From the NCBI GenBank assembly GCA_965649765.1, contig OZ287756.1, forward strand, positions 56,234,001 to 56,298,000: a DNA stretch of 64,000 bases, written 5' to 3'. A program made the position numbers and the translations under genes. Position 1 is the stretch's first letter; each line of letters starts with the position of its first letter. This document shows positions 1 through 60,529 of the stretch, piece after piece. The notes under the pieces are model-generated. The model had not been told where the DNA came from. It did no database searches and worked only from the letters and a program-made list of their open reading frames with translations. Source of the DNA: Bispira polyomma (lineage: Eukaryota).

Positions 1-216
1 TTCAGGTCCACAGGATCGTGATCCAGAATGTGGAAGAGCTTCTTGAAGGCCTCCACAATAAAGATGAGTGCAATTAACAGGGCGAAGCTCTCTTCCGTGA
101 AGCGGGTGATGTAACGGACCAGGGCGCTCAGGTCAAACATCACCATGAAGAAGAGGATCAGAGACATCCACATACCAATCCAGAAGCGCAGAGACAGGTA
201 GTCCAGGCCATAGGTA
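1..216 (-). CDS. SLC4A10: SLC4 exon (TM4-5), runs off the window: [16 protein letters not shown]...[28 protein letters not shown]
   Basis: ctccctccag| acceptor, phase 2; ITRFTEE motif. Confidence 0.97.
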
Positions 217-3200
217 CTGGAGGGAGAGAGAAGAAAGCATTAAGGATCGGGCTATAAGGAGTGATTACAAAGTACAGTATGACCTCTATTATCTTACTAT
301 ATTGGGAGAAAGAATTTGTTTGGATAATAGAAGGTCCGTAAAATAGAAGGGCCATTTTAGTATGAATTAATACTAAAAAATCAGTTTTGTAAAATGGAAT
401 ATTTGGAAAATATAGGGACAATAGAGGTTCCACTTAATGCCTAGTCAAACTCCTTTAAAGTTGAACTCTGATAACTGGAATTACCTGTTAAGTAGAAGTT
501 ATTGTAAGGTCCCATTGCTATATTTCTAATTAAAATTTACCGTTAAGTAAAACCAATGTTTACGTTCCTTCCACCGGCTTTATATATTGATATAATTACT
601 TACCTGCAGAAGTTGTACACTATGGTCTCAAACACAAGCACAGGCCCCGTCGAGCCAATGATGGTGAGCGGCTGTCCCGAGAAGATGTGCCAGGATATGC
701 CACAGATGGCGCCACTCATCAGACTCTCCATAGCCGCCTGTGAAAGGGAGGAAATGGGGGGAGCGTTAATTATGGTTAATTAAGGTGTGTTACAGAACAT
801 CCTTCTAATAAATTTGAAGCAAAAAATAAAGTAAACCATGCTTATATACTTACATGCATATATAATACCATATATATCAGCCACTCAGTATCAATCACTA
901 TTATAGCGAATAAAATTTTCTGCAATTTCCACCAAACATATTATCGCATTTAATTGTGAAAATTTGTTTTTTTGTTTTGTGGCATCAAACTAGACCTGCA
1001 ACAAGTAGGTAGTTTTGTACCCGAGTATTCTTTTACCATTATTCGATTTAACAAGTACTCTGTTCTCGTTTTTCTTTAAAAAGTTATAGAAGAAAATGAC
1101 TCAATTGAGATCAATTTTATAAGAATATTTATAAAACTGTAAAACTGCTGACATCAAACGTGAACAGAGTTCTGTTTCTTCAAATGTTGTACTCCGATTA
1201 GTTGATAACTCTATTTTTGAACGAGTACTTGAGTAGTCTTTTACAGCCCTACAAATAAACACAGTGCTACAGTAAAATTGGCCTTCGACTGACACTGACG
1301 CACACACCCTTACACACGCACCACATCTACACTTACCCTTAGGGGTGAAACGGGTACCAAAAATGCAGCCCAAGTATCCGCAAGCATCTAACCATCCCGA
1401 CCGAATCCAGGTACCCACGAATATAGTATACACCAATCCCAGAAACCAGTCTAGCAATATGGCTGTTCTTGTAAACAAAGTCTTGTAAACAAAAACTAGC
1501 AAATATGTGGGCTAATATGGAAAATTAGGAAGAAAACGTATATATTACGTGCAAATATGAGGCCAAAGTTATTGTTTTCAATGAAGAAAACATAATATTT
1601 AATTTAGTTTATATTAGTTTATATTAGTTTTTAATAGACGTTTCAAGTACTGGAATATTAAGGATAGTGGTGGAACGATTGTCGGCAAACATCGATACGT
1701 CGGTCGAGATAGCTTATACTATCAAACATTGATCTCATAACGTCATTCATCGATTAATCGCTAAATACTGTTTCTAACTTTAACTACTAGATCTTTTTAT
1801 GTTCATATGTGATTTGAGATGGTTTTTAAGTCAAATAAAGCAATTTTTGTCAACTTTATATTTGTTTTCGTGTACCATCATGTTTACCGAAAGTTATATA
1901 GGTTAGCGGTAGATACTAAATGTCAAACGTTCGAATTTGACCAAATTCTTACCGGATCACAGCATATTCGGCCCGGGATGGCAGGATAAGTAACTTAATA
2001 CTCTATAACAATATAATTTTGTGTATAATCGATTTCAGGTTGATCATCGGTCGAAAAAATTAAGCAATTAATCGACCTGCAAAATCAAACCAATTCCCAA
2101 CACCAATTACGGATGTACTCGACAGTACTAAAATATCCCACCGTGTGCCGCCGGTCACCGATTACCTGTTCATAGCCCTACTTACAATGTTGTTGTCTGT
2201 TGCTGCTCCCAGAAGCCCCCCAAATGTGATAATTGGTGTGAGACAGGCAAAGTAGATGAAGAAGAAGGAGGCCAGACACTGGATGTCAATGGCGTCCTTG
2301 ATGTCACTTGGGTAGAATTGCAGCTTGCGCTTGACGTCTTGTACCAGGCCACCGAATAACCTGTGTATGTGTGAAAAGACACAACATGGAACAACTAATC
2401 TAATCAATTCTTTAATGGTGCTTAATCTCCGTATTCAGTAATCATGGACGGAAGAAAAAGGGTAGTTACCAGGAAGAGAGCCGGTGATGGTAAGACTGTG
2501 TTTGGTGGCCTGGTACAGGACATCAACTCTAAGCACTGGTCCTCTATATATATATCTGTCTCTATTCCATGTACAGACGGATATAGTAAAGACCAAATAG
2601 AGACGAATATATTCTAACTAGAGCTTACACTTGACGTCTTGTAACAAGCCCACGAATAACCTGTATTTGTAGATACACACAACATTGAATTTAGTTCAGA
2701 TTTTCGTCGCTTTCAACAGTTTAGATCATATCAAGATGGCCAAAGTCAATGGTGGAAGAATTTTTATTTTTATTTTATTTTATTTTTTTTTTAAATTGGG
2801 ATATTTAACGTACACTGTAGTACCTGTATAGGTTATATTGGGACGGGCAGTTGGAAATGCTGGAAGAAACACTGCATACAGTTGATCAAGGTTCTGCACT
2901 GAAACCAGCGGCCAACAGTAAGGAACTACCACCTTTCCCACATAGGCATCGACGGGATTCAAACTCACGCCGCCAAGAGGTGAGAGACCAGTGATTGTGA
3001 AGCGCAATGCTTCCTAACCACTAGGCCACCGTGGCCCCTCAATGGTGGAAGAAACCTGTGCTTACGCTTAATGTCTTGTACACAGGCCAACTTTAGTGTG
3101 AATATTCACGCACAGTTATAACAGTGCTGCGGATAACAGAAGATGTAATAATTACAATGAGTTCACTGTATTCTACTGGTCAAATGCAGTAGCAACTCTA

Positions 3201-6200
3201 TTATCAGAACCATGTTAGAAGAGACAGCAATATTTTGTTCAGATAATAAAATAGTTTCATAAAATAGAGAAGAAGACATTTTAGTATAATATATAAACAA
3301 TAGGAAACTCTAAATTTGGGAGAGTGAAATTGAGTTCATAAAAAATCAAAAACCTTTGGATAACTGAAGTTTTTGGCTAAAAATCAAGGTTTTAATGTAA
3401 TTGCAGAAGCACCAGTGTTTATAAATTTGCAAATTTTAGGTGAGCCAGGTATCTTTACAGAGTTGCTAGCCCATCTTGCTAGTAAATAAACTAAGATAAA
3501 TATTAAAAAAAATAAGACGATTGATATTTCAAAACAAATGTTTCTTACTTTATTTATTTACAAAAAATGCTTGATTTTATTAAAAAATTTAGAATTGCTT
3601 GCTTTACTGTTTAAATCTCTTTTGGTCTTTCTACTGTAGATAGTAGTCCATGTAGTTTCATCTATGAATATCAGTATAGAATATTGATTTTTTGCAGACT
3701 ACTGGACAGAGAACTTTCGGCTTGGGCTTGTAACTTTTAAGAGTTACCAGCCCGCTGGACATGTCAGTTTCACTGTGATAGTTTTCAAAGACTGTAATGT
3801 AACAGAGGCTGTTCATACCTGCCAGTTCTCTCTAATGTTGAGTCCCCATGGCCCTCACCCTCGGGTCCCCCGCCCCCATTTCCTCCCCCTCCGTCTGCGG
3901 CATCTTTCTCGCCCCCAGCCCCACCCTTCTCGTCCCCACCCCCGGTCCCGTTAGGCATGGTGTTGAGGTTCTCCGGCACCGTCGGCATCTTCTTGCGGCC
4001 CTCCTGCGAGGGGACGCTCTTGGGCGGCTCAATCCGGATGTTTGGGTCCCACTCTCCAGGTGGTAGCACCGTCACCTGATCCAGGAACTCGTCAATACCC
4101 ACCAGCAGGTCGTCACGCTTACGTGCCTTGTAGGCGATTTCATGGAACACCTAACAGTAGAGACAGAAAGTGTATGATATGGGACAGGAGGTAACCAACG
4201 AGAGTTATTTCACACAAAGTGAGAAATATTAAACCTTCAATTTAGCCGGGTTGATTGCTTCCAACCAATCAATCAATGCCTTACATATTATTTCCAACAT
4301 AGCAGCAATATCTGGCAGCACCTGACAATATTAAGCTGACACCCCTAAGTTTGGCCGGGTCGATTGCTTCCAACCAATCTATAAGATTTCCTAAGTTCCA
4401 ACATGGCAGCGCTTTCCAAAATGGCTGCGCACTTAAAAAGGGGCTCAGCCACTAAAATTGGTCCTAAACACTTCTGTTTAGTATTTATCATTGACAAGTA
4501 TTGTGTTAAATAATATGGCGGCTTTCTGAAACAAAATTATTAAGATAAAAAAATACCCAGATCTTCTAATATATTTTGAAATTATTATTCAAGCATGAAA
4601 ACTTAAAGTTAATGCTATTACTGCGCGAAAATGCATCTGTATAAGGTATTTTGTGAATGTTAAGCATTATGTGAGCGAATAACTATTACTTTCAAGGAAT
4701 TGAGTTGGAAATATGGACCCACCCACCACACCCATCCATAGACATATCCACACAGATACCTGGTCAGACATCGATGTAGCTATATCTGCCAATCTCGTAG
4801 TATCTGGTATATTTCCTTATTTATGTCACAAACAGCCACCCACTCACGCACACGCACACAACCACCCACCCACACAAAAACACCCCCTAGCCCCACCCAC
4901 CTCATCAGACATCAGTGTAGCTTTAGACCTGCCAATCTTGTGGTACCTTTCCTTATGTCTGGATACAAACACAACCACTTACACACACATACACACAGCC
5001 ACACACATACCCACACATACACAGCCACCCACACAACCACCCACGCACACACCCACCCACCTCATCAGACATCAGTGTAGCAATAGACCTGCCAATCTCG
5101 TGGTACCTCTCCTTATGTCCATGTGGCCCCAGTAAGATGAACAGGAAGCGTGTTGGTATGGGCACCTCTGTGAGGTCACCCAGGTGTGCCGACTTCTTGA
5201 GGCGGATAAAGCCCATGAGGGGCTGTTCCAGGAAGTCCACCTCCCCTACCATAATGTTAGAGGCCTCGGCTCCTGGGGGGAGCTTCTTGAAGAAGTGCTC
5301 ATTGAACTGGAAGTAAAATAAACAAAAATAAACACACATTAAAACAAGGTTGAGTTATTAATTTATTCAATAGTAACATCACTAATTAGAAGTGCAATGA
5401 GTAGTCGGTTAATCCCTCTAACCGAGCGGTTTGGCATGTGGCCTGACTCAGAAACAGGAAATGGATTACTCGCTAAGTTTACTTTTGACACACATACAAT
5501 ACATTAAACCATACATAAACATAAAATTATATATAACTAGACCTAGCGCATCGGAGAATGGATGCATATTTGTATCCACCAGAAGGACAAAGCACCCTAG
5601 GTAGAAAGCACCTTAGGTAGCAAGAACCCTAGCTAGCAACCAAGCTAGGAGCCAAGCTAGGAGCCTATGATTTCCCATTTATGCTAAAGCCTTAAATCGC
5701 ACAAGTGCAAAAATGTGGAACCAATAAGTATAAGATAGGCACTTTAAAGTTTGGCCTACCCATTTGACCTTGCACAAGGGATCCAAGGTCAAATTTGACT
5801 ACAGCAAAAGATTAGCCACCCATGATTTCCTATAGGTTGGTTTCACATCCCAAACCTTAATATTTTAATTTTTTGTGGTGATAGGGGTATTTCCTAGTAT
5901 ATTACCTTGTGCGTTGAGGGTACCCGACTCAAGTCACTGCCTTCTGTATCGACTGGAGAGAGGTGAGGGGCTGAAGCTTTTCTGTTAAAGGACGGGATTC
6001 CCTTCAGCCCTTCTATAAACCATAGCAACACAAAAAACACATGTCTCACACAGACAATATAATAAAAAAAATTTCATCTTTCAGTATGGCCGGCAGTAGT
6101 TAAGTAGCACCTTGCAATCAAGAGCTTTACAAAATCTATTGCATGTGAATCATGTGTCGCTGCATAAAAGTAGCTTTAACTACATCGAAAAATTTTTATA

Positions 6201-9200
6201 ATTATAAATTTATGTTTTAAAAACCAAAAGCGAGTGACACATAAATGAACTATTCAATTTATTTACATGTATTAATTAAAATTCAATAGTACATGTGGAA
6301 TATATAAATTACCAGGTATTCTCATAATTTAATAAAGATTTATAATGTTGCATTAGTTTACATTTGAGGTACTGTTACTTGTTTTAAGTGTATTGAGCAA
6401 GTCTTAGAAAGTCGAGTAATTTTAAACCATCACACCAACATTTAGTTCAGTTCACCCACGCAAAAGTAATATTGCAGTATATCAATGACAAAAAGTAGCA
6501 ATTTAAGACAGACAGACAGACAGACAATATATCATATAGACATCATCATTACAAAACGATACAGCGGAACTCCTTTAAGTTGAATCTCAAGAGACCATGA
6601 AAAATACAATGAAAAACATTTTTTGTCGGACAAAAGGTGCCGTATTCACAGTCTTAAAGTCTCAACTTTGTCCTAATTAACTTAACATTAATGATATTTA
6701 ATACTGCATACCGTTTGTTTTAGTGTTAAGAGCAAAGTTAACACAGAGCAAAGATCCATACTTACTGTCACACTGGAACCAAGACCAAAATCTTGACCTT
6801 AAGTAGGCCAAAATCTTAAGATTAAGTCAAGACTAAAGCCTTTTATGAATACGGCCACAGATTTTATCCACATGAAAGGCAAACTGGCTTAACAATTTAA
6901 AAGTTCTACTTAAAGACTGAATATATATCAACACATTCAAAGCCAATATGTCAATGCACGACTCCTGGAAAAATAAAAGGATATAGAAAGTTTTTAAATA
7001 AAAACACACGTCTGCACACCATACTGAAATACTGAATGTGAGAAAAAGTACCTGGCATATAAAGAAAAAAGGTACTCGCGTCAAGAAATACACAAAACAT
7101 AAAACCTCCAAAAATATGTTGTTGAAACCAATTATCTGGAAAAAAACGTTGAAAAATTGTTTGTCACTTGACAGCAAAACGTCATTGAGTACTAGTGGGT
7201 AAATCGCTCAATATATGTCACAAGATATTGAGGCAAAATGCTTTTAAATATTAGCATATATCTAAATGACTAATAAAGAAATCGGAACATTCTATTTTGT
7301 CATTACAACAAAAATCGGCGGGAATGACAAAAGGAAATTAAAACCGGTAATTTCTTTCAATGTGGATTTGGAACTTTTTTTAAAAAAAAGACAGCCTTAT
7401 CAAGCTTTATATGATGATGGTAAACTAGGCAATTTCAATAATATTATACCAATATTATGCACATGTTATACACATCAATATCGGTGCCCACGAACTCAAA
7501 ACAATAAATTTTGAATTGTCCATATATATCGATAAACAATTTACCCACTTAAGGAAATACACAAAAAAAAATATTCACAGCAAAAAGGTCAGAAAATCAC
7601 TTGACACAAGGCGTCAGTAACCATTAGTGGATTGGAAAATCTTTGTCAAGGGAACTTTGATCTGCAGTTGGCTGGCTTCTGATTGGCTAACATGGGGTGC
7701 AGGGTATTTGGGCCTTATAAAGTTAATGAATGGACTGCTTTAATCATAAATGGACTGCATGTACTGATAACCACAGGAAGACTACTGAGTATATTGATTA
7801 TAGAGGTGGGTACTTGAGGTACTGGTATAATAATTTACAGGCGAGGAGGGGTACTTTGGCTACTTTAAATGTCTGGGTATATCAATTAGAGTGCAGGGTA
7901 CCTTTATTGGTTACTCTGGGTATAACAATCAATTTGAGGGGTACTATTTGAGGTACTACTTACTATGAATGTGATTACTCTTGAAATATATGATGGTCGT
8001 ACCCCTTTTCAGTCTAATAAAAATCTGTTGTACATCTTTTATATCATAGCAGTTTCTGTTTCGGAATTTTTATGTATAAATTATCTTAATTATGATGTTA
8101 AAAACGTTTAGATCAGAAATTAAAATGGACCGGATTTTGGAAGATTGACTATATATATCATTCACAAAGGGGGTACCTTGGGTGGGTATATGAATCACCT
8201 TTGTGTACCTTGGGTGGGTATATGAATAACCTTTGTGTACCTTGGGTGGATATATGAATCACACAGTTGGTACCTAGTTTTATCAGGCACAGGACTTTCT
8301 TTTATTTCAATACAATGCATATTACACCACTTTTACACCACAAATTACAAAAATATACTCCCAGTATCCTAACAGTACAATATTGGCTTCTTAAGACATT
8401 GCGAACACCGTGCGACATAGAACATTATGGTAGCATACCCCTATCTTTTCACTGATACACACACTCTCCTGGTCCCCAAAGTACTTGTTTACAAAGTAGC
8501 TGGTACCCAAAGTACTTTTGTACAAAGTACATTTAACCCCAAAGTACTTGTTTACAAATTACATTTAACCCTAAAGTATTTGTTTACAAAATAATTACAA
8601 CCCTAATGTACTTGTTTACAAAGTACCTGATATCCAAAAGTATTTGGTTAAAAAAGTACCTTTACCCCCAGAGTAACTTGTTTACAAAGTACCTTTAACT
8701 ACAACTTACTTGTTACCTCAGCCCTAGACTCAATAAATTAAGTTTTCAATTCAAGAGTAGCCGGGTACCTTCTATTACGACACCAACTTAGATGGATTCC
8801 ATCACAACCAAACCCCTCTCAACCCCCCACCCCAACTTCTCCATCCACACAGACAGTTGCCCCTGTCTCCCCGCATCTACTCACAGTTATGGTGTTTTAA
8901 TGGCTGATCAAAGCCCAGCGTTTGTCTTGTACAATGAAGGGAGCCACAGACACAAAATGTCAACCCATAAAAATGGAGCTTTTGAGATACGGAAACCCTA
9001 CAGCCTTTGGGTGAAATCAGACCAACTTCTTCAGTCTCAGAGTTTTTTTGAGAACTCAGTAAGCTCAGACAAATTTTAGCTGCTTAAACGACTGCCCGTC
9101 TCGAGCACCTGCCCATACGGACGACTATTATGAAAACAATATTGCTTTGCCTTACAATACAAAGGCTTTTGCATGATAAAAAAACTGTTAATGGTCTTAA

Positions 9201-12200
9201 CTACTTAGCCAAAGAAAGCAGCACAGCGTTCCATCACATTGACACACACAAAGATACACAGAAAACAATAGCTTTACCTGTAAGACGTCTAAAAACACCT
9301 TGTGAAAAAACCACCTAGGAGATTGTGGTACTTAGTGTAACTTAGTGACACCCAACTTAGCCTGTTGTTATAACTCAAAATTAACCCTTAGCCAGCTAAC
9401 CCCTAATTCCTAACATTTGACACTTATAACATTTGTTTTGTCCTAGTCCTGAACCCCATTCTTTTGGAAGAGGAATCCTGTCCCCGAGCATGACAGTACC
9501 ACTAACTAAACGTAACAATATGTCTCCAATGGGGACGTGGAGGGCTGTAGTCCCAAAATAAGAAATTTGTACACAACCAGCTAGACTTAATTCAGTCTTC
9601 TTATTGAGGACACAATTTTAGATGATGTCATTTTATAAAGTCATCTGACGTAAAAAAAGGAAGGGTTTTTTTTGCTTCAGACAATGCATCTTGATTCTCA
9701 GCACACAAAATTCAACTACAGCAGAACCCTCATTATTCCAAATACAATATATTCCATTATTATGGACATACTTTCATCCTCCCACTTTTTCTAGGGCTGG
9801 GAAGAGTGGTAATTTTTGCACTCGAGTACTCTTTCACCATTTTACTTTCCTCTTCAACAAGTACTTTTTTTTAGCGATAAAAGATACAAAATGGCTCACT
9901 TTCCATTGAAATATATCAGAAATTGACTTATTGTCATCTGTATGCAAATATATACAAAAATATATTAATATTTACCCGGGAAGGAGTACTCTTTCCTCCA
10001 TTTTGCACTCTTAAAATATTCATTAGATACTCCATTCTTTAACGAGTACTCGAGTATTCTTTAACAGCCTTAAATTTTCTTCCCTAAATTCTTCTTTTAT
10101 ACTATTATAATATTACCTCTTGCAAATTTACCTGCAAAAAAATCACCTTTTATTACATCCGAATAGAATTTTTCTCTCTCTCAACATGTACGAATAATAG
10201 AGGTTCTACTCAATCTACTGTTTTATATATATTAAATCAGAGGTCCAATTTTCTTTGCTCACTGTAAGCCCCAGTCCCCCCCTCCCCCTTAACCACCACA
10301 ACCACCTTACATAGTTTATCTTGTGAGTGAATCTTTGTAAACCCCCCACAACCTATCATTATATCATCATGGAGGACACATAACATGGAAATATATGCTA
10401 TTAGGAGGTTATTATTAAGCAAAGGTTTGCGGAGGGTTTTTAAATTAAAAAAAAAAAAAAAAAAATAGGGAATGAAAGTAGGCGGCAAACCCAAAGCATG
10501 CGGCGTGGATTTCCTCCGTTTGTACTCAGCAGATGGACTGGTGAAATCTAGAAAAATAGGAAGGTAAAACCATACAGCTTTAACAACACCTGAGCAGCAT
10601 TATGGTACACTAACTAGTTCAATTATTTTTTTAAACAGTTTTTTTAATTTAAATATGTATCACTCATACTACACCAATTTAAATTAATATTAGTTGTTCT
10701 TGAACAGAAAACACCAATTTGTATCAAAAACACTGGCTTTTGGCTTTAATTTAATATAAACATTAAAAAATATGTAACAATCGTTAAATACAAAAAAACT
10801 ATATAAACATTCTGTCTTTTTGAGTTTAATAATGAAAAAGATTTCTTGGAGCCTAAGTGACCCCAAGAAGATAAAAAGCACAGTACTCGCCCTACTGGGC
10901 TCATATTACAAAGTTGATCTTCTTTCATCATATAATTTTTTTATTACACACTACTTGGATAGTTTTACTATTATATATTGTTAGCCCAAACAACCAGTCC
11001 TATCATGAGTTACAGAGTTATAGCAACCTCTAAAACACCACAGTGACCTTGTGAAGGTCACAGATTAATTGCCACCTGAGATAATTTAGTCAGTTTTTAC
11101 TTGCCACGCAAACACAAATCACCACCTAAAACTTTGTCGCCTGTATTAATCTAATTAATAATAATACTGTGCATAAAAGTTGAGATTTCAGTTGGAATGC
11201 AATGTCACTAAATTTACACAGCCAGGCATTTTGAAGGCAAAGATTCACTGCAATGAATATGCATCCTAAGTGGCCAACTGAGTGTATTTTAAGACATGTA
11301 TACTCATTTTAAATTTTCACACTAGATAATTTAAAGATTTTCACAAAGGAAAGTTCACTTCAATTCCAGCAAATTTATCCTCAAAATTTAAATAGCCAAA
11401 AAAATGTCCCCTTGCACTGAAATAACTATTTAATTACTATAATTCAAGTACAGATACACCAGGGCTAGTATTCACAAACTTAAGATTCTAAAATCTTTAG
11501 TCTCTATCAATTTCATTGGCTGAAAATAGTGTTTCAAATGAAAACATTTCTAAGAATTGCATTTTAATAATGTTTGTGAATATGTCCCCAAAACCTCCAT
11601 TATTATTCAAACTTCTTTGACCTGAATATTTCTTTTCGGGTACATATATGCTCTTTTATTACCAAAATTATATTGTGCTGTATGTTTTTTTTAAAATAGA
11701 GTATAAAATGTTGTTTTTTTTTATATTATTATAAGAATAAAGTCTCACTGCAAAGAGGTTTTGAAATAATAGAGGTTTTACTGTGTTTTATGCAAACATA
11801 TCAATGCATGTATAAATAGGCAATGTAGTTAAATATGAGAAGAACTAAACTGCAAATAAATATATATACCAAAAATCCATCCGTTATACAAGCCACTTAG
11901 CAGAATTTTTTTTTTCAAACAGAGCATGTTATAAAAAAGATAAACTGCCCAATATAGGAAGCAAAACCAAACAAACAAGTACAAGTCAGCTGGTCAATGT
12001 CCCTAGAGTAGAAGCTATAAATGTAGCACAGTGAAACAAGCACAGGAATGCCAGAATGGGCATTACTCTCAGCCCCCTCCTAAAATGCGAAACACAAGAA
12101 ATATACAGAAAGCGATCCTTGATCAAGTATGATGGATAACTGATATTTCTTTTTTCTTTTTTTTGACCATCAACATATCAGTGTTGTACAATACCATATG

Positions 12201-15200
12201 GGTCAGTATACTAAGCCCTGTAGAGATAGCTAAATGGAATTCCAGGTGATATCTTTTTGAAGTGAAAATTTACTTTGATGACCTCTGTTTTTGATCAATT
12301 TAACCCAAGGCTCAAAACAAGTGGAAAAGTTAGTAGATAAAAAGACAACTATAAGAATTGTCCATTTTTATCTTCTTCAGAGAGGTAATTAGTGTTGTGT
12401 TATTATTGTTGATGGTTGTGGTTAAACAAACAATCCTAATAATTTCTGTATCCTAATAAATCACTTGACACAGGATAAACATCAAAATCCATATTAGGAG
12501 TTATTTCAAGAAAAGACCATATTGGGACATACCAAGATACTTTTTTTACTCAAACAGAAAGCAATTAATTTGTGCATAGATACGTACATGCTACACAACA
12601 ATTTTGGTGGCCAAAGAGCCCAATCAATAAATACTGTCAGTATCAATGAACAATTTACCCAGTAATTCTTATGTCTATTTTGATGAAAAACTTTTATTTG
12701 AAAGATTTTTGCAGATGTAGAATCCTCAGTAAATTGATATAGAGTTAAGACGACCTTGAAACCACAGAAATTTGTCAGAAACAATCATTGTAAAAATGCA
12801 CAAATAGGCAAGAATTATCCACGCATATATATTACCAACTATCATCAATGAGAAATACTTGTAAGAGTTCCGCAGAGTTCCACCTCTCGGTATTATAGTT
12901 GTTAAGCAGGGTTATTATCTCAGCTTGATACCATATCAGAAGCGAACAGAAATTTTATTACCTCCCCATGACACCATATCAGAAGCTATCAGAACCGTTA
13001 ATATCTCTCCATGACACCATATCAGAAACTATCAGAAATGTTATTATCTCACCATGACACCATATCAAAAGCTATCAGAAACGTTAATATCTCTCCATGA
13101 CACCATATTAGAAACTATCTGAAAAGTTATTATCTCACGATTACACCATATCAGAAACATTATTATCTCATCTTGCCACCATATCAGAAGCTATCAGAAA
13201 CGTTATTATCTCACCATGACACCATATCAGAAACTATCAGAAAAGGGTTATGATGTTTGAATAGGAAAGAAACTCTCCGCACAACCCAAGTATAAATGAA
13301 TCCAGGGGCCGTATTCACCAGGAAACTCAAGCTCTTGAACTCAACTCCAATGATCGCTAGCTGTTAATTCACAGTACATGGAAATAACCTACACTTCTAA
13401 CAATGCATTTTAATACAAGCCTTCAGCGCTGAATTCAAATATGTCTCCACAATTTACCTACTATAGGTTTTATTCTGGCAAGAGATATGTGTACTGTTGA
13501 AATAGACAGTACTTAAACAGTGCCTTGGATTTGAGCTTGAGATTTTTCAGGAATACGACCACCCCAGAAGTATATAATGTAGAAGCTAAAAACTTAAGAG
13601 AAGAGAATATTTAGTACAGCAGAACCTTTTTTTACGGACATCTTGGGAGAGTGAGAATTTGTTTGGATAACAGAATGTCCGTAGAAAATAGAAGTGGCAT
13701 TTTAGTATAAAACAATAGCAAAAAATAAGTTTGGGAGACTGAAATTGAGTTTATAAAATCAAATATTCAGATAATAGAGTTTCTACTGTACACATGACAG
13801 ATTTGATATACATGTATGTATATATATGGGAGAGTAAAGAGTGAGCGTTAATGTCAAAAGCAATACAGGAGAGTTAACTTAAGGCTGTAAATCAGACCGT
13901 GTGAGAGGGCGTGGGGGGTGGACATTCTTCTGGAGTAGTTCATCATGCCATCTGGAACAGAAAACGGTATACGTATGTCAGAAGGGTGGTTGTACACGTA
14001 AACAACAACAGGCGTAAGTACACATAACGAGTTATTGCAATAATAGTGTATACACTATTTACTACATAGAATATTCATTATATGACAAAACTGCGTATTA
14101 TATTCATAACCATACAGTGAAACTTGCATATAAACATAAAGATCAGCCAAGGGAACCCTCCACAGTGGTCATTAAACTAGACTCCTTGCATATATGTCAC
14201 AAAACAAGGTCATATTAGTTTCTAGCAGTCCTGAGAGACAACAGTATTCTGAAGAATAACTTCTGATTAACAGCAATGTCAAGGTAATTGCCTGAAAACA
14301 ATTACCTATATTAACTGTCTTCATTGTTAACACGGTATATGTAAATTATGTGCGTAATCGGGTACATTATTAAAGCAGCATTTTGAGCATCATGGCTGAA
14401 GGCAATTAGTCCAGGCCATTCTAGGTTTTAAAATTGGCTGCCAGGTGTTTAATTAAATATAAACAGTGGCTGCTGTTTATATTTTTGTGGTGAAAGCAGA
14501 TAGTGCAAATCGCCTTCAACGCACAATTACCTCCACAGCTTCTAAAATCTCTGAAAACAAAATCCCAAACATGCTCAAAAGAACTTTTGGTTGGCTTGGC
14601 TCTCTCACTGAAACTGTATCTATATCAATATAACAAAGTTACAACAACCATTCTGTTACAGTTGAAGAAAACTATTATATATAACGTACATGCACACACT
14701 AAAAGAACAAACAACCAACTTTATACACTGAAGCCAGGAATTCATCTGTCATCCACTATATACATATACTGAATCAGTCTAAAAGAAAAAAAAGAATTCA
14801 GAGAAAAACGATGCACAGGCATACAGCATGCAAAGATCATTATGAAGTACACGAACATAAAGAAGTCATGTAGAACTGAAGAGTTGTCTTTGAAAACTTA
14901 AGCTGAAATCTAAGCTATCTACCCTATCTCTGGTTAGAGGGACGTGAAGTAACATCTGACTGCATATTTGGGAGTCCCTTTTATATAGCCTTCAACTGAG
15001 TTGAGTCAGTAGCTTACATATTATTAATAGCAGACAGCTCTTATAATAATGGTGCAATACAGTATAATACGTCATAACTTATTATATGTATATCATACGT
15101 CATAATACGTCATACTTATGTATATTTATATTACATTTGGAAATCAAACCTAAAAATCATAATCATTCCTATTGGTACAGCTTTAAACATTTCAACATCC

Positions 15201-18200
15201 ACCAAATTTAGCAAAGGTTTTTTTAATGTAACTAGTAGGATAAGGTTAAATATGAAGAGGCTTTTTTTCAAGATGGACGCCAAAAACAGACGCATTCCAA
15301 AAAATTGTATCATACTCTTTTAAATACCCCAACAAGAATTAGGCCAATAAGACTCCATGTTAAAAAGGTGCCATGACCAAAATATGGTTGATGTTGCATC
15401 AAAACTGTAGCCTGTACAGTGTTGAAAAGAGGGTGCTGACGACAGCAACGGCATATTCAGGCGTAATCCAAAATCATAATATACATGAAGATTTCTTGTG
15501 ATTATTATGGCGGTTGGACCACGGGTAGACTTTTGAGAATATGACACACAAACGCGATGAATCATGCAGACTTAACACAACTGGATCAAAGCAAAACAAC
15601 ATCCACAGTCAGACTTCGAGTATGAAAGAAAACGGTCACCCGTCCACAAACACTGTTCTGTAACATTATATATAGGCTTTAAAAGAACAGACTCTCCAAC
15701 AGGAAACTGATGCAAACTTAGCACAAAAAAAGGCATGCAATTAATATGGCAGAACTTATAAACATTACCAAGGTTTTGTTAAAGAAACTCAACCAGATAG
15801 CTTAGAAATTTCACTTCATCCTTGTATACCCCTTGCCAATTTGTGACATGCACCCTCTGAGCGGGCAGAACAATGCAAAGCTGCAATATTTAGTACCTGC
15901 TCAAAACTGGTCTACAATTGCACCCAAAATGAGCTTTCTCCAGTCAAGAGAAAGTCAAGACTTTCGCAAAACATCCTTGGCAACTCACATGCCAGCCCAT
16001 AACTCAAGGCAAACAAAACTTGACATAGTGCACCTTCTTAATATGGTGTTAAATATGAAATCAGCTTGGCCGTTGGGGTGATACAAAAGGAGGAAGCTAA
16101 ATGTGCTTAAGGCTTTAGTGATGTAAACACAAAAAACGATCGCCGCTAAACCACGTTGTGAAGGAATCACTGTCTAGAAACATACACTACATTGTTATAA
16201 AGGCCTCAAAGTCAATTTTTAAATACGATTTTTGCTTTATGAGTTGTGAAAATGATAGAGGACAGATTAAATAACAATTCAAGCTGAATTTTATAAATTT
16301 TAACACTGATTTTAACAATTTATCAGCAGCAAATACTATGTATAAGAAGGTGTAAAATTGTAACAAAAACATCAATATTTGTCCAAGTACACCCTCCACA
16401 AACGTGACACAATACACATACCAAGAAGGTATTAATACTGAAATATTGTACATGACTAGAAAAAGGAAAACATTAGCAATATTTTGAATGAATTCGTTTT
16501 TTCATGAAAGTACAAAAACGGGGATAAATAGAAAAAACATTAAAGTTACACTCTTCTGAACAGAACGATACTTTGTATTCTTCGTTTAAAAAACATAAGG
16601 AAACATATTTAAAAATGTAATTCATTCAAAACAATATACACGTTCTATAAAGTTGTGTAGTATATATAATATGTTTATATATGCTGGATCAATACTCGTA
16701 TTGTGTCACAATAGACGGGGCTCTCTGCGAGAATTGTCTACAAATATGACGTTCTACCACAGATTTCAAATCGTGTGACGTCACAATACAAGAATCGTTA
16801 TACGGCTTTTTTATTAACTATGCAATAAAATAATGAAGTTTTAAATAGTATTTGAATATAAAAATATGTAAAACGATCATTAAATAACCATTTTATGACT
16901 GCTGTAGTAGGTATATGTGCTAAAGTTACAATTCATAAATGCAATATGATTTATCGGCAACGTGTTTGTGTGTTTACGTTACTAAAGCCTTAATTAATTA
17001 ACTAATGCCATAACACAGGGAACGCTTAATAAAACATGGCTGCCTCAGCAAAACACTAATCTTATATATCTTAATGCTTAAGTAAAAACGATCATATCTA
17101 TGATGGAGTAGCAGTAAACAACAATTGTAACCACGGCAACACGTCACCTTTTCTTTTTTTAAAAAAAACAAAACAATTAAACGAGGAAGAAAGGGGAAAA
17201 AAAACCTGCAAGCATACAAGACAGACAACATGGAAAACCTGGGAAACTGTCACCAAGACGCTTGTCCGAGGGGTGATGGGCCCCGTGGTTGCCATGGTGA
17301 CCACCGTGGTGGTGGTGGTTGTTATGGTGGTTGCCATGGTCATTGCTGCCATGAGAGGATGTGAAGCTGTGGCCCTCTGGTGAGTGAGAGACAGACAAAC
17401 AGAAAGAGTTTACAAAGTCAACATAATGTGTGTCTGTTTATGGTCATTTTAGGGGGTTTGGTTTAAAGGGGGTTTGGTTTAAAGGGGGTTTGGTTTAAAG
17501 GAAAAAGAAAAAGGTAGCGAAATCTAAATGTTGCTTCCAATTAGTATCATTATTATCACATGAATTTAGTTTGGGGTTTACGTGGTTTTTAACAGCTTTG
17601 ATCATTTCAAGACAGTCAGATTTAATTTTAATGGTGGAAGAAACCAGTGGTGAAGCACTGTAGACTACTGACCTACAGCAAGTACCTCACAAACTATAGT
17701 ACATGAAGGAATGAACAGGATTCGAACCCACATTGGTGAGAGGCCAATGATTGTGAGGCAGGCACTTCTAAACACTAGGCCATTCAATGAGATTCCTAAT
17801 ATTGCACTAAAGTCATAAAACTAGCTAAATTTCTGCTCAAATGAAATAATTATACAGCGCTCTGCTAACGTATGATCCTCTCACTTAAAAGCACTTTTCT
17901 GTTCAGAAGGGATATCAAGATCATTTAGATCTCAACCCTCTAGTTTCCAAAGAACTTGTACAAAAAAATCTTGCATAGCCAACTGTAAGTAATGATATTG
18001 TCAATTTTTCAGACATGAACACAATGTATAATGATGGTTGAGTTTATACTCTTGATCAGCAATAAAACAAGGGCTATTCATTTTAACTAAAGTGTGTCTA
18101 TAAGTATGCACATTTACACATTTACAATGATTTGCTAGCTAAAAAACCACTCTGTCCTTTGTAATAGGTACCATTAGTAAAACCAAAGCATCACACAATG

Positions 18201-21200: not shown

Positions 21201-24200
21201 AATAATGTGACATTATTTTCTGAAGTTACGACTCCATATTTTTCTTAAACACAAGCATTTTATTTGTGGCAAAAGTAATTGACTGCGGTATAATTTGTGC
21301 CACCAACGTCATACTTTACGTGATCATCACAGCCAACACACATCATACATGTAATTTGACAGATTTCTGACGTCAATTTTCTCGCTCAAAGCCATTGCCC
21401 ATGGCACAGGTAACAGCTATTAATAGCTATATACCATTATTGTTTAACATGGCAATTATCCAACGACACAGCATATATTATATGAAATTCTGGAATATAA
21501 TATTTTTAAAAATCGCAATCTATTTACCAAATATTATATACTTTGGTACAAAAAAAAAACAACACTTCAAATTATTCCAAATTGGAATTACTTTAATATA
21601 TTAAGCAGAACATTTTTTCTAATACATATTATTTTACCATGGAAACTATATTACCCTGAATGCTACCAAAAATTTTTTTTAATTTGTCATATTTTTTAAC
21701 ATTACAATCTCTATTACCCAAACCAAACAATAAATTTGTTGAAAGAATCCATGTAAATCTTCTCATTTCAAATTTCCTCCAAAATTCAATCTTCTGTCTG
21801 CCTTTATAGTCTAAATGTTCACTAAGTCTTATCTTTAAACAATAACATCTAAATGGTTTGGATAATCGAGGTGTCATTACAGTATAGAAAATCTTTACCT
21901 AAACAAAAAACACATAACAATAAACAACAGTACATTATAGGAAATCTTGACCTACAAACAGTGAAAAAACATGCAGTTATAAACAGTGACACATATTTAG
22001 TATAAATTAATGGTTAGCATTACTGACTGATGAACCATATGACACACTTAATTTGTTTTAGAAAATTGTGACACTTGTGTATGGTGGACACAGCCAATCT
22101 TTTTCACAAATTGATGAAGCGGCAGTATATTGCCCGTACTAAAGGAGTTACAGGTTACATTATAGCTGGGATTACTGAAACACACACCACAGTCGACTCT
22201 TGGAATGTCACAACTTACAGCCTCTATGATTTAATTTCTGCAATAAGTGCACAATCTGCCTCAAAATATGCACGAGCAAGTGAAAGCCGAAGTCGGTGAA
22301 CACATCTTCCGTGAAATGGTTAATGTAAAAACACTGTTACATCCATACACAACAATGTAATTAAGTCAGTTATGATTAGATATATAATATCATTGACAAT
22401 GTTATTAGCCTAAAAATAATTGAACTGTGATAGATAACTTACATCTCGATAAAAATGATGCTCATAAAATTCCAAAAAATACTCCCCCTACAAAAAAATA
22501 CAAAAACAAAATGTTTCTGTGGTCTTTACTCGGGAGTTGTAACTGGACTCGTTTAATACACATATTTCATTTAACTACGTAGACTTTACCTACTAAATAG
22601 CAGATATGATAGAACATAGGACATAGGTGCACACTATGTATATCAACAAAATATGTTGCTTGGCAGGTGCTGAAGTTACCAAAAGCTGAGAACACTTTGA
22701 AGTTAAAACTTACGACAACAATTTGACATATATGACAGTGGGTAAATTGTTTATTCATATATTGGACTCCTCCGACGGGTTTTTAGATTGGTTTAAAACT
22801 TTTATTTGTTCAATATTTTACCTTGTGGCAGCACTTACAAGTACACAAACCATTTTAAATAGCATATGAATACCTTTCCTCAAAACAATATACTTCTAAA
22901 CACTTTAAGTGGTTCAGACTTTTTAATTAATGCTTGGGTAGATTTCACATGTTGAAACAAAAATGTTTTATTATTTTCTTGGTAGTTGGACTGATTTTAT
23001 AATCATTCAATAATGGCGATAATGATGCCCTCGATATCTCAATCTTGTGACACATAAACAATTTACCCACAAATGAACTTGAATTAAACACGTCGTCGGA
23101 AGAGTTCTCTGTGTTAATATGTACGTGTGTAACACAAATGTCAGTAATAGGTCAGTTATAAGCAAGTGTATTTCCGTTAATTACAAGAAGCTACCAAAAT
23201 ATTAACTAAATAAAGACAACATGTATTAAAACTGTGCCTGGGTGCCAAATTCTCCCAGAATTTTTATTTATTTGGGTTTTTATGTCACTTTTGGTCATAT
23301 TGTGACAGCCAGGTTTATTGTTGGGACGAAACCCAGTACTACTTGTACTGTAAACCACCCACCTGCAGCAAGTGTTACCTCGGGACTTACCTCTGCCAAA
23401 TGAAGGAAGCAGGTGGGAGTTCCAATCTACTGTACTCTGAGGGGTGAGAGGCTGTGTAGTGATACTAAAGCAAATGCTTGCAAAAACACTGTAGGCCAGC
23501 ATGTTATTGCATTTTATTAGATGACGACGCGTGTCACACACATAATAGACACATTTTATTACACACATGTACATATAACACATACAGAACTCTCTGGACC
23601 TTCAGAACAACAACATATTAAAAGGAACTAAAAGTAAGAACTTGATGATTAGATCAGAGATGTGTTTGTAGATACAGAGCTTGTTGTTACCTTCGTATTT
23701 TAACCTTTCCACTGGACCTAGAGATACAAGGAGAGGAACACAATGACTGGATGGCTGAAGGTGTGATTCTGTATTTGTATGTGTGCAGCTGAATATGTGT
23801 GTGTGTGTGGCTGAATTTTGTGTGGGGCTGAATTTAGTGTGTGGCTGACTTTTGTGTGACTGAATGTGTCTGGCTCAACGTATTTCTGTCACACTGAAGG
23901 TATGTGTCAGCAGCTGGATGCATGTGGCAATCAATAAGTTTAAAATATTTTTAATATGTTCATTTCTGAAGTAACTACTACAATTCCATAATGCAATACC
24001 GGTAGCGAATACCATTTTTTTTGCACTTTTTTTAACAAATGGCATAAAGCACGTTGATTAAAACTGTCTTTTATGGAACAAACATAAGATAAAACAACAA
24101 AAAGACTTTTGTAAAACAAAAATACAACATCACAGCGATTTGAAAAGATTTGTGAATGGAAGCCCCTCCAGAATACTCTAATCTCTGAAATTTGTAAATG

Positions 24201-27200
24201 AAAAACCAGTTCAACCAGTTTGTTTATCTAAATAAAACAAGTTACAACCTGTTAGCTGTCTTCCAAAACAGTTGTTGAAGAATTAATTTCTAAAGTTTGA
24301 CTAAATGTAACCATACAAAAATTTAAATGAAATTTTTATCTTTCTCAGCATTATTGCTCCTAACTCATTTCTGTGCCTTATTCTAGTTTTGTTTACTGTA
24401 TAAATTCCACATGTTAAAGGATCTACAAAACTTTGTTTTAATTTTCTTCCTAAAATTCTTGTCATTTTCTTTTTTAAAAACTAGTTAAAAACTTGTTGTC
24501 GGTTGGTTTTTGCTAAACCAACAACAATCATGGTTTAAGAAAATTCCAAAGTAACTGCAGCTCTAAAAATAATCTCACAACGATACATGTATATGTGTAA
24601 AAATGAATAAAAACAATACAACCCAACCACAACAACGGAAACATTTAAGTTAAACCACTGGTAACTATTGTAACTATTGCCAAACGAAAATCTACACCCA
24701 AACTTTGTGCCACCATACAAAAAGAGTACTGAGTTACTACACTGATGTTCGGGTCATAATTATTATACCGCTTTGTCGAATTTTTTTCTTCTCACACAAA
24801 ACATGGATATCAACTGTGTACTAACATAGATCCGAAAAAAAATAATAAATAAATAAATATAGATACTAGTACTATCTGCTGAAAAGAATCCAATATAACA
24901 TGTGTACCCACAGAAGAGAACTAGTACTTCTAATCTACATTCAAAAACATTTATAATTGTAGAATTGTCACGAGTTTCCCTGTCACCTGACACACATTAA
25001 ACCCATCACACAATTATTATACAACATCCTTACCTTTGGGTTCCAGTTGCTTGGAGGAGTGTCGTTTGCCAATATCTGCAAGGGAGCGCACCATCGACAT
25101 CCCTTTACCTGGAGAAATTTTTTTTAAAAAGACAAAAAGATCACTTAAAGAGTATGGGACTGTGTGTATTGCATGGGTGAGACAGGGCACTCTCTGGTAC
25201 TCAATAAGGAGCCCAATTTGTTGGGAAACCAAAGTGAAACTAGCGGGTACTCAAAAACGTACAGTTTTACAGTTAAAATCTCGACAACCATCTACCTGTA
25301 AAACAACCAGACAAAAACAACACTTGAAGAGTAGGGCTATGGCTGTGTATTGTGCTTGAAAATCTTATTGCGATATATTCCAGTTGCATTCGATATTCAG
25401 GTATTGCAATTTATTATCCACTCAGCCGTGAAATACAGCAATTTGGTGTGTAATACTTCAATGTGTTGTTGCACCCTTATTGAAGAGGTTTAAGCATCAA
25501 CCAGACTGAGGCTCTAAGAGTGATTCCCAAACTTTTCACTTTATTTTTCTGGATCATGGTAATTTCTTTTAATACTTTTTTTTGGGGTTGTAAAATTGAT
25601 GTAGCAAATGATGGCCAAGCAGGTAACACCCTTGCTTAGGAATACAGAGGACCTGGGTTTCAATCCCAGCCTTTGGGGAGTGACAGGTACAGGTAGATGT
25701 ATAGTGGCTCAGATGACCACTACAAAGTGGCAGAACTCTTGTGAATGGGTCCTATCACCAGTGGCAGGCTAAAGAACCTCGCATTGACATTGACATGAAT
25801 TCGAAAGTTGCGTCATTCACAAGCCTCTATCTTCAGTAAGAGGAATAATAACAGTTAGTGGTGTGAGTTTGCATGATTGACACTTTACAAGGGATTTAAT
25901 CCCATCCAAGTTGAGATCCTACCTCCAATACCTAACTACCAACTTGAATTTAATTAAGGGTTCTATGTCGCTTTCAAAAGCTTAGATCATATCAATGACA
26001 GCCATATTCAATGTTGGAAGAAACCAGTGCTAAAAAGCCATTGTAAACCAATGGCCTACAGCAAGTACCTGACAAACTTACCCACATAATATAGTAACAA
26101 AATGGATTCAAACCCACATTGCTGGGAGACGATAGTTATAATAAAGCAGGAGTTTCTAACCACTCGGTTACCACGGCCCCATACTATCCTTGAATTTCAA
26201 GCAGTATATATGAGTGTTTGGACATATTGTGTTTACCTTAAAAGTGATTTTCTAATTAAAAAAAAATAGTATAATACCTGTAAAATATTATTAAAAATTT
26301 TATATTGTGTAAGACAAAAAATTGTAGTTTTAAATGCTTTAAGAACATAAGCTATATGTGTATTACATCTCCTTAGGAGGATAATCCCGAGCTGAAGCAC
26401 GGTAAACCACAAACCTACAGTAAGCACCTGACAAACTTCCCCAATGAGGGAACGAATGTAATTCAAATCCACATTGGTGGGAGACCGGTGATTGTGAAGC
26501 AGGCGCTTTTAACCACTAGGTCAGTGCAACAGCCCCTAGCTATATCTATTTTACATCTCCTTTAAGAGGTTAATCCCCAGCAGGCCGATGTCCTAACACT
26601 GACCTTCTTTCTTCTGATGCTGATGTCTGTGTTTGGCCATTAACACGTCAAACGTCTGGTCTTTGTACTCAATGTTCAGGTGATTGCCAGCAATCATACA
26701 GTCCAGAACCATGTCTGCAAAAATAAAAATCAAGCCCAATATAAGACATAATACAGTGTCTGAACAAGGTATGTGTAAAAAAAACAGGTCACATACACTG
26801 GTGGCATAAGTATTGCAGTAATCGAAAACCGGGACGTAAAAACAGGAATGACATCCGGTATATTTTGTTTAATATCACAGTCTTCTGGTAAAACGTATAC
26901 CAGGTTTACATGAGTTATACCTTCCAACAGGAACTGACAGCTCAAAAACCTTTGAAACTCATAAACATTTGTTTCTTATAAGCGTAAGAATTAAATAAAA
27001 TTTTAATATTTTGATATGATAAGTGTAAAAAAAAGTAAAATATAAATATTTTGGAAGAATTCTAGTATTCCCCCTCACGTGTACGAATACATCTATTACC
27101 ATATAGGGATATTTAAATAACCCCCCTAAACCCAAACCCTCAGTTTAAGTGTAAAATATATTAAGGCTAAAGAAAGATGGCTCACTCCCCTAACCCTAAA

Positions 27201-59466: not shown

Positions 59467-60529
59467 TACTAAGTGGTTCGGCTGAAAAGTTTAAAGACTT
59501 ACGCGAAATATCCTCCTCGCCGATGTGGCCGCGTGCAAAGGACCCCCGGTCCCTAAGCGGCTGGTCTTCCATCTCGTTAGACATGTTTTCTCTCTTCCTC
59601 AGTTACCAGGGTCACTCTGTCAAAGCCTGTAGAACATTCGGGGTGGAGAGGCGTCTGCTTGTAATGTATTCAAACTCACGGTCACGTTCGGCTATACTTC
59701 AACCTTTACTTTATATGTTTTTATGGGTTCAGCACCGATGCCAAATGTAATCACACCTTTTTTCCAAACCACAGACCAACTGCAACAGTACTGTCTATCC
59801 AAATGACTGCAATCGCTTTTTAGGCACTGTCGGTTCTGCTACCAAAAGCTGTTGGCAACTTTGCAAGTACTAAAATGGAAGGTATATAGAGTTCGCCCGA
59901 CTCTTTTCAAATTGAAGTTTCCTCTGTCAGAGCTATATGGAGAACTATATCTATATATATATAGACACTTTAAGCAAGCAGAGACGTGTTGAACTGTTGC
60001 TGCTGTACAGCTGTCCAAAGCTCCCAATGTGGCTGGATATTTATCCTAGTGTACAATACGCGCACATACGGTACATTCACCTCACCGGCGACATCCACAA
60101 GAGAATCCTCAATGAAGTCCGATTTTGTCAGTAAGTTACCCAAGGCTGTGTGAAAAAAACAAGCGTGCGCAACTCTTCACAAACAATCTTGTCCAATGTG
60201 TGCGTCAGGTCCTCCGATTAAGTGAGTGGCACAAAATATTATCTGTGTGGTGTTTTTTTCACCAACAAAAAACTCATTCTTTTTAAAGTTTGTTTTTGAA
60301 CTAGTGTGTATTGTCCCAGCAGCAAGTGGTCACCTACTAACCAACTGAACGTTGTGGTTTTTAAGGAGACTCACAGATGCATTCAAAAGCCTCAGCTTCT
60401 TCAGAAGGAAGATCCAGCGATTACCTAAGATAAAAAACAAATAAGCAAAAAATTATATTGTAGCGATGTTTAAGTTTAATTTTTAAGGTGAACAAAATTA
60501 AGTCTAAACTTTTCTTTGGTTGATTAGTA
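59467..60529 (-). mobile_element. Highly decayed mariner-like DNA transposon
   Basis: tacta...gaaaagttta(a)agactta inverted ends; remnant SSPYSSD peptide (cf. mariner PYSPDL) on the minus strand. Confidence 0.4.

What the first reader, a model, noticed from the sequence alone, without database searches (positions are those of the whole stretch)
5906..13951. Serial phospho-switch exons: YxRRxSTPHAL encoded in separate tiny exons with saturated synonymous divergence
Seen: exon 13898-13951 encodes [11 protein letters not shown] and exon 10491-10547 encodes [11 protein letters not shown]. Across RRxSTPHAL, seven of the eight conserved residues use different codons (AGA/CGG, AGA/AGG, ACC/ACG, CCC/CCG, CAC/CAT, GCC/GCT, CTC/TTG). 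The constitutive exon 5906-6012 carries a third variant, [10 protein letters not shown]. Established: RRxS is the PKA consensus and RxxSxP fits the mode-1 14-3-3 site; the SLC4 Nt variable loop hosts regulatory splice cassettes in vertebrates (e.g. NBCn1 cassette II). Inference: an old exon duplication kept by purifying selection lets splicing set the number of phospho/14-3-3 sites (1-3) on the transporter, possibly enabling bivalent 14-3-3 binding. None of these exons is in the ORF track.
Basis: partly seen in the sequence, partly recalled or inferred. Interest (0 to 1): 0.85.

Follow-up and report, generated by a model that had tools for sequence, protein, structure and literature searches.

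The report
Duplicated phosphosite exons in bicarbonate transporter
In a worm's pH-regulating bicarbonate transporter gene, two tiny look-alike exons each add one likely kinase site to a loop known in mammals to act as a phosphorylation brake; one exon is backed by a relative's mRNA, and a ribbon worm has independently evolved a similar series.

Summary
An annelid SLC4 Na+-coupled bicarbonate transporter gene (minus strand) has two in-frame phase 1-1 exons, A (13951-13898) and B (10547-10491), encoding RRxSTPHAL, with 7 of 8 codons differing. The pattern occurs twice in 1.035 Gb, both here. A relative's transcript carries A's core SRRMSTPHA unchanged (9/9 residues, 6/8 codons silent-changed) at the same position, so A is spliced in that species and under purifying selection. 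B has no transcript or orthologue support and a weak donor. Skipping is not shown: this species has no RNA run. The constitutive third site is not conserved as a PKA/14-3-3 site in the relative. The loop is the NBCe1 'P-loop', where phosphomimetics inhibit transport by binding the membrane domain, a better-grounded mechanism than 14-3-3, which remains untested. Lineus longissimus RefSeq isoforms carry an independent series of 51-57-nt RRxS exons giving 1-5 sites. So this is a new variant of known SLC4 loop cassettes. The scan noted this cassette array before only on this same DNA. In passing: three mutually exclusive copies of a transmembrane exon lie downstream in the same gene.

The parts
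13898..13951 (-). Cassette exon A, 54 nt, phase 1-1; candidate phospho-Ser codon at 13922-13920
   Evidence: Acceptor rank 26/949 and donor rank 74/1302 in the intron. Core 9/9 identical in the relative's transcript P0282/L008.
10491..10547 (-). Candidate cassette exon B, 57 nt, phase 1-1; candidate phospho-Ser codon at 10509-10507
   Evidence: Strong acceptor (rank 7/949), weak donor (rank 570/1302). No transcript or orthologue found.
5906..6012 (-). Exon C, 107 nt, phase 1-0, presumed constitutive; RKASAP site, Ser codon at 5974-5972
   Evidence: Needed to restore phase 0 before exon 5306-5061. Orthologous exon in P0282 is only 52% identical and reads NRTSVP.
25034..25108 (-). Upstream RSLADIG exon; ends in phase 1; carries KRHSS, aligned to the start of the NBCe1 P-loop
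5061..5306 (-). Conserved Nt core exon (Band_3_cyto) closing the loop
23691..23717 (-). Candidate 27-nt phase 1-1 exon, the best-scoring splice-site pair in the intron
   Evidence: No homologue found.
23391..23426 (-). Candidate exon with the strongest donor in the intron; acceptor and start uncertain
   Evidence: donor rank 1, acceptor rank 507. No homologue.
17239..17376 (-). Candidate His-rich phase 1-1 exon, 138 nt; end uncertain
   Evidence: Similarity to homologous loops not above shuffled control.
59503..59584 (-). First coding exon of the SLC4 gene
54624..54774 (-). SLC4 coding exon 2
29741..29879 (-). SLC4 coding exon (Nt core)
27544..27704 (-). SLC4 coding exon (Nt core)
26604..26714 (-). 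SLC4 coding exon; separated from the RSLADIG exon by an intron absent in L002 and Paralvinella
3819..4150 (-). SLC4 coding exon (end of Nt domain)
2186..2360 (-). SLC4 transmembrane exon
604..737 (-). SLC4 transmembrane exon
1..216 (-). SLC4 transmembrane exon running off the window; gene continues to about G000:C9:56211000

Best explanation
A and B are old tandem duplicates of a small exon, possibly copied from the 5' end of the constitutive exon C. Each adds one basophilic-kinase site (PKA or CaMKII type, RRxS followed by TP) to the disordered Nt loop of an annelid NDCBE/NDAE1-type transporter. Shown: the exon anatomy, and splicing plus purifying selection of A in a relative. Inferred: both are optional cassettes here; inclusion changes the number and spacing of phosphosites in the loop equivalent to the NBCe1 P-loop; phosphorylation then lowers transport, most simply by the loop binding basic intracellular loops of the membrane domain, so splicing sets how strongly a kinase signal brakes bicarbonate uptake in a given tissue.
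For: Relative's intron-less 4380-nt contig L008 (run SRR24204647) has a 48-nt insert with SRRMSTPHA between the RSLADIG and EGLKG exons. Core 9/9 identical with 6/8 silent changes, while four-fold sites in core exons differ at 63% and exon C is 52% identical. Shared start, phase and rare donor of A and B. In the relative, cassette and constitutive exon align in register from their inferred acceptors, 4/11 identical (shuffle P = 0.005). The loop aligns with the NBCe1 P-loop, whose two phospho-clusters 18 residues apart inhibit by 70-80% and need loop length (PMC12394656); site spacing here is 19-21. The basic acceptor residues are mostly kept: IL4 R808/K809/H811/K812 all present, IL3 K711 and a basic residue at 714, IL6 R925. 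Optional cassettes at this intron are general: NBCn1 cassette II, crustaceans, bees, Haliotis, Dimorphilus, Lineus.
Against: No RNA for this species, so neither inclusion nor skipping is shown. The single relative transcript includes A, so A might be constitutive. B has a weak donor and no orthologue. K712 and K927 of NBCe1 are not conserved, and the conserved basic residues are common to SLC4s, so that test is permissive. The P-loop mechanism was shown for NBCe1-A only, with phosphomimetics. TPHA is conserved beyond what a kinase or a simple electrostatic brake needs. Splice scores come from a small model (18 donors, 19 acceptors).
Confidence: 0.55

Rival explanations
1. One reading: A, B and C are mode-1 14-3-3 sites; co-inclusion creates a pair that one 14-3-3 dimer binds bivalently, changing activity or surface level. 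Compatible with the best explanation up to phosphorylation; differs in the effector.
For: All three sites fit R-x-x-S-x-P. Pro at +2 is kept in A, B, C and the relative's cassette although PKA does not need it. Spacing 19-21 (16 in the relative) meets the minimum of 15 and is near the typical 20-40 (PMC3914767). The genome has 14-3-3 genes.
Against: None has Ser at -2 of the strict RSxpSxP form. Site C lacks Arg at -3 in the relative. The parallel Lineus exons have RRFS without Pro at +2. No paper on 14-3-3 binding to an SLC4 turned up.
Confidence: 0.3
2. A and B are mutually exclusive alternatives: splicing swaps the flanks of one site (Met or Lys at -1, different upstream residues) and does not change the count.
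For: Tandem duplicated exons are often mutually exclusive (PMC9013439). The relative's transcript has only one motif exon. The same gene has a frame-enforced mutually exclusive trio downstream.
Against: Both are multiples of 3 and 3350 nt apart, so neither frame nor steric limits force exclusion. No convincing pairing elements between the flanks. The Lineus serial exons are annotated together in one isoform.
Confidence: 0.2
3. Only A is functional (perhaps constitutive); B is a decaying or rarely used duplicate, so there is no splice-set series.
For: B's donor ranks 570 of 1302; B is absent from the relative's transcript; no orthologue found.
Against: B keeps 9 of 11 residues with 7 silent changes, an open frame, 51% GC against 31% in the flanks, and a top-1% acceptor; its flanks share no detectable DNA similarity with A's. 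A long-dead copy would have lost these features, so decay could only be recent.
Confidence: 0.2
4. The two motifs are chance intronic matches or independent inventions, not duplicates.
For: No DNA similarity in the flanks; the reversed control pattern matches once in the genome.
Against: Two genome-unique matches 3.4 kb apart in one intron, both in frame between AG and GT, one present in a relative's mRNA; shared rare donor.
Confidence: 0.03

Closest known systems
NBCe1 (SLC4A4) P-loop, residues 230-262, with optional cassette I (PMC12394656)
   Same: Same position right after RSLADIG; disordered, Ser/Thr-rich, contains an optional cassette; two site clusters about 18 residues apart.
   Different: Cassette I is 9 residues from an alternative splice site (PMC4664831) and is not a duplicated kinase-site exon; SPAK and CaMKII were implicated, not PKA or 14-3-3.
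NBCn1 (SLC4A7) cassette II, 123-124 aa (PMC4664831, PMC4464172)
   Same: Optional regulatory exon inserted after the RSFADIG exon; carries a signalling-protein site (calcineurin).
   Different: One large exon with a phosphatase docking site; no sequence similarity to A or B; no serial small duplicates.
Lineus longissimus SLC4 RefSeq isoforms X1-X4 (XP_064646371-5; P0507, P0309, P0506, P0508)
   Same: Serial small exons (51, 57, 57, 54 nt), each with one RRxS site, in the same loop; isoforms hold 1 to 5 RRxS sites; also an optional RRQS cassette (18 aa) in the very intron of A and B.
   Different: The series lies one intron further downstream, is phase 0-0, and reads RRFS/RRPS without Pro at +2, so it arose independently. 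These are automatic annotations with no functional test.
Arthropod NDAE1 loop cassettes (Portunus, Palaemon, Calliopsis isoforms)
   Same: Several optional exons at the same intron, some with RSxSxP or RRxS.
   Different: Unrelated sequences; not duplicated motif exons.

Membership tests
SLC4 Na+-coupled bicarbonate transporters (NDCBE/NBCn/NDAE1 group) | Band_3_cyto plus HCO3_cotransp domains | tested here: met
   exon by exon
SLC4 Na+-coupled bicarbonate transporters (NDCBE/NBCn/NDAE1 group) | Closer to NBCn1/NBCn2/NBCe1 than to anion exchangers | tested here: met
   Stand-in P0282: 1191, 1143 and 1086 bits against 713 for AE2; groups with annelid orthologues, SH-aLRT 99, quick tree only
SLC4 Na+-coupled bicarbonate transporters (NDCBE/NBCn/NDAE1 group) | Measured Na+-coupled transport and stoichiometry | not testable with these tools
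   Needs expression
Alternative cassette exons | Canonical splice sites, frame-preserving, stop-free | tested here: met
   (B donor weak)
Alternative cassette exons | Present in mRNA | tested here: inconclusive
   A: yes in a relative. B: no evidence. No RNA run for this species.
Alternative cassette exons | Both inclusion and skipping forms exist | not testable with these tools
   Only DNA runs available
Tandem exon duplicates | Homologous peptide, same phase, similar length, adjacent | tested here: met
   9/11 residues, phase 1-1, 54 and 57 nt, shared G|GTYTG donor
Tandem exon duplicates | Residual DNA similarity in flanking intron | tested here: not met
   No repeat family joins the flanks; expected for an old event
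Mutually exclusive exons | Frame, steric or RNA-pairing constraint against co-inclusion | tested here: not met
   Both 3n, 3350 nt apart, no convincing pairing
PKA sites | R-R/K-x-S consensus | tested here: met
   A, B, C; C not conserved in the relative
PKA sites | Phosphorylated by PKA | not testable with these tools
   Needs phosphoproteomics or kinase assay
Mode-1 14-3-3 sites | Arg at -3 and Pro at +2 | tested here: met
   A, B, C and the relative's cassette
Mode-1 14-3-3 sites | Ser at -2 (strict RSxpSxP) | tested here: not met
   Arg or Lys at -2; about half of real sites lack this Ser (PMC3914767)
Mode-1 14-3-3 sites | Paired sites at least 15 residues apart in a disordered region | tested here: met
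   19-21 residues; loop disorder taken from PMC4664831, not predicted here
Mode-1 14-3-3 sites | Phospho-dependent binding | not testable with these tools
   Needs pull-down
NBCe1-type P-loop autoinhibition | Loop at the homologous position with Ser/Thr clusters | tested here: met
NBCe1-type P-loop autoinhibition | Basic acceptor residues in IL3, IL4, IL6 | tested here: inconclusive
   IL4 4/4, K711, R925 kept; K712 and K927 not

The most novel reading that the evidence does not exclude
Annelids and nemerteans independently evolved serial single-phosphosite exons in the same SLC4 regulatory loop, so that splicing counts out kinase sites one exon at a time; in this annelid the count switches 14-3-3 binding from monovalent to bivalent, a mode not described for any SLC4.
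Probability: 0.2. Interest if true: 0.7.

Novelty: new variant of a known kind. Interest (0 to 1): 0.42.

Why it matters
The function of optional cassettes in the SLC4 Nt loop is largely open, and the loop was only recently shown to be a phosphorylation brake. Natural isoform series that differ by one kinase site per exon, in two phyla, give ready-made constructs to test whether site number and spacing grade the inhibition and whether 14-3-3 takes part. The general ideas (cassettes in this loop, splicing of kinase sites, tandem exon duplication) are known, and the case is confined to one annelid lineage, which limits the surprise.

Tried and rejected
RNA runs for this species: none served; the three runs found are DNA and show no variants over A or B, so no polymorphism test was possible. 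Motif exons in orthologous introns of Paralvinella (L009) and an unnamed animal from a metagenome assembly (L002), and in three paralogues of this genome: none. JGI metagenome scan: 11 loci, none with the motif. Among all proteins fetched, only P0282 has the motif in this loop; a similar string in Gigantopelta P0121 lies before the RSLADIG-equivalent and was not counted. A fourth RRLSTP at 59656 was rejected: 5' UTR, followed by a stop. Pairing elements for exclusive splicing: none convincing. Homologues of the 27-nt, 36-nt and His-rich candidates: none above shuffled control. The species of SRR24204647 could not be identified. Exon 2 was read out of frame (10 of 521 codon pairs), a small error in the core totals. 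The tree is the quick version only. No structure prediction was run: a disordered phospho-loop would not be informative.
Full report
Observation. A (13951-13898, 54 nt) and B (10547-10491, 57 nt) lie between AG and GT, start and end in phase 1 and contain no stop. C (6012-5906, 107 nt) converts phase 1 to phase 0 for the next core exon. The codon list is right: 7 of 8 codons differ across RRxSTPHAL, with 58% DNA identity over 11 codons; the gene's own codon usage predicts about 5.4 of 8 at saturation. The degenerate pattern matches twice in 1.035 Gb, both here, against one hit for the reversed control. In the 19-kb intron, A/B is one of two 9-of-11 peptide pairs; the other looks like a pair of repeat copies; eight control blocks have none. 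The bare R[RK]xSxP motif does occur by chance, twice more on this strand. DNA runs confirm the assembly over both exons.

Gene and organism. Pfam places Band_3_cyto and HCO3_cotransp exons along the minus strand. The closest full-length relative is P0282, from an intron-less 4380-nt contig of run SRR24204647 (L008), about 73-81% identical in DNA on core exons. It groups with annelid orthologues, next to Paralvinella, in a quick tree and scores best against NBCn1, NBCn2 and NBCe1 structures. I read the window as an annelid NDCBE/NDAE1-type gene.

Exon A is real. The relative's transcript has a 48-nt insert between the RSLADIG exon and the EGLKG exon that contains SRRMSTPHA (its boundaries are inferred from the transcript alone). 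All nine residues match A while six of eight degenerate codons differ, including the two Ser codon families. Four-fold sites in core exons differ at 63%, and neighbouring exon C is only 52% identical. A's peptide scores 47 against this loop, with a shuffled maximum of 36.

Exon B is unproven. It has a strong acceptor (rank 7 of 949) but a weak donor (570 of 1302) under a small model trained on this gene. It is not in the relative's transcript, nor in Paralvinella, L002 or three paralogues. Its preserved peptide, open frame and exon-like GC (51% against 31%) argue for long selection. No RNA run exists for this species, so inclusion, skipping and co-inclusion are all unshown.

Origin. A and B share nine residues, phase, size, first dinucleotide and an unusual donor G|GTYTG found at 8 of 1302 intronic GTs (noticed after the fact). 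Their flanks share nothing, so the duplication is old. In the relative, the cassette and the start of the constitutive exon align in register from their inferred acceptors (4 of 11 identical, shuffle P = 0.005), which suggests the cassette was copied from the 5' end of exon C. Molluscan orthologues have KSTPN at that place. Site C is not conserved as a PKA or 14-3-3 site: the relative has NRTSVP.

Mechanism. The loop aligns with the NBCe1 P-loop. There, phosphomimetics at two clusters 18 residues apart cut transport by 70-80% without changing surface level, loop length matters, and basic residues in IL3, IL4 and IL6 are required (PMC12394656). Sites here would be 21 (A-B), 19 (B-C) and 21 (A-C) residues apart, and most acceptor residues are present. 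I therefore rank a splice-tuned phosphorylation brake first (0.55). Bivalent 14-3-3 binding stays possible (0.3): Pro at +2 is conserved and the spacing fits (PMC3914767), but no SLC4-14-3-3 report turned up and the third site is labile. Exclusive use of A or B (0.2) and decay of B (0.2) remain open.

Comparison. Optional exons in this loop are the rule: NBCe1 cassette I and NBCn1 cassette II (PMC4664831, PMC4464172), and crustacean, bee, abalone and Dimorphilus isoforms. Cassette exons that encode kinase or docking sites are a known class (PMC1904267). The closest parallel is Lineus longissimus: four serial exons of 51, 57, 57 and 54 nt, each with one RRxS, plus an RRQS cassette in the intron of A and B; annotated isoforms carry one to five sites. 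That series is phase 0, one intron downstream and lacks Pro at +2, so it is convergent.

Verdict. Real feature, new variant of a known kind. Exon A and selection on its motif are shown; B, alternative use, phosphorylation and 14-3-3 binding are inferred. Interest 0.42.

Noticed in passing
L016:2237-2165, L016:1053-981, L017:7552-7480 (G000:C9:56226436-56226364, 56225252-56225180, 56221851-56221779), minus strand, outside the window: Three tandem copies of a 73-nt transmembrane exon (P0282 residues 904-928, probably TM11) in the same gene, each with AG and GT. 73 is not a multiple of 3, so co-inclusion breaks the frame: a mutually exclusive trio. The middle copy is 25/25 identical to the relative's transcript. 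One copy only in L002, Paralvinella and Lineus; no variant seen among isoforms of other species fetched. May deserve its own follow-up.
   Followed up: partly
L030:10612-13416 and 7306-7356 (Lineus longissimus): Serial small exons each with one RRxS site; isoforms X1-X4 hold 1-5 sites.
   Followed up: yes
window 23691-23717, 23391-23426, 17239-17376: Further phase 1-1 candidates in the same intron, including a His-rich one whose tail resembles an optional Dimorphilus cassette by eye (KRLGD against KHLGD) but not above shuffled control.
   Followed up: partly
window 26604-25108: An intron splits what is one exon in L002 and Paralvinella: a lineage-specific intron gain.
   Followed up: partly
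window 4760-5060: Two degenerate copies of the 3' end of exon 5306-5061 lie in the following intron; similar echoes follow other exons in L017 and in paralogue L010.
   Followed up: no
window 13630-13779: High-copy short repeat (MITE-like) about 120 nt downstream of exon A, with fragments near 10190 and 11770.
   Followed up: no
window 34716-37557, plus strand: LINE-like endonuclease and reverse-transcriptase ORFs in pieces, within an intron of the gene (identified from the translation, not by a search).
   Followed up: no
window 59656: Chance RRLSTP reading in the 5' UTR, followed by a stop before the start codon.
   Followed up: yes
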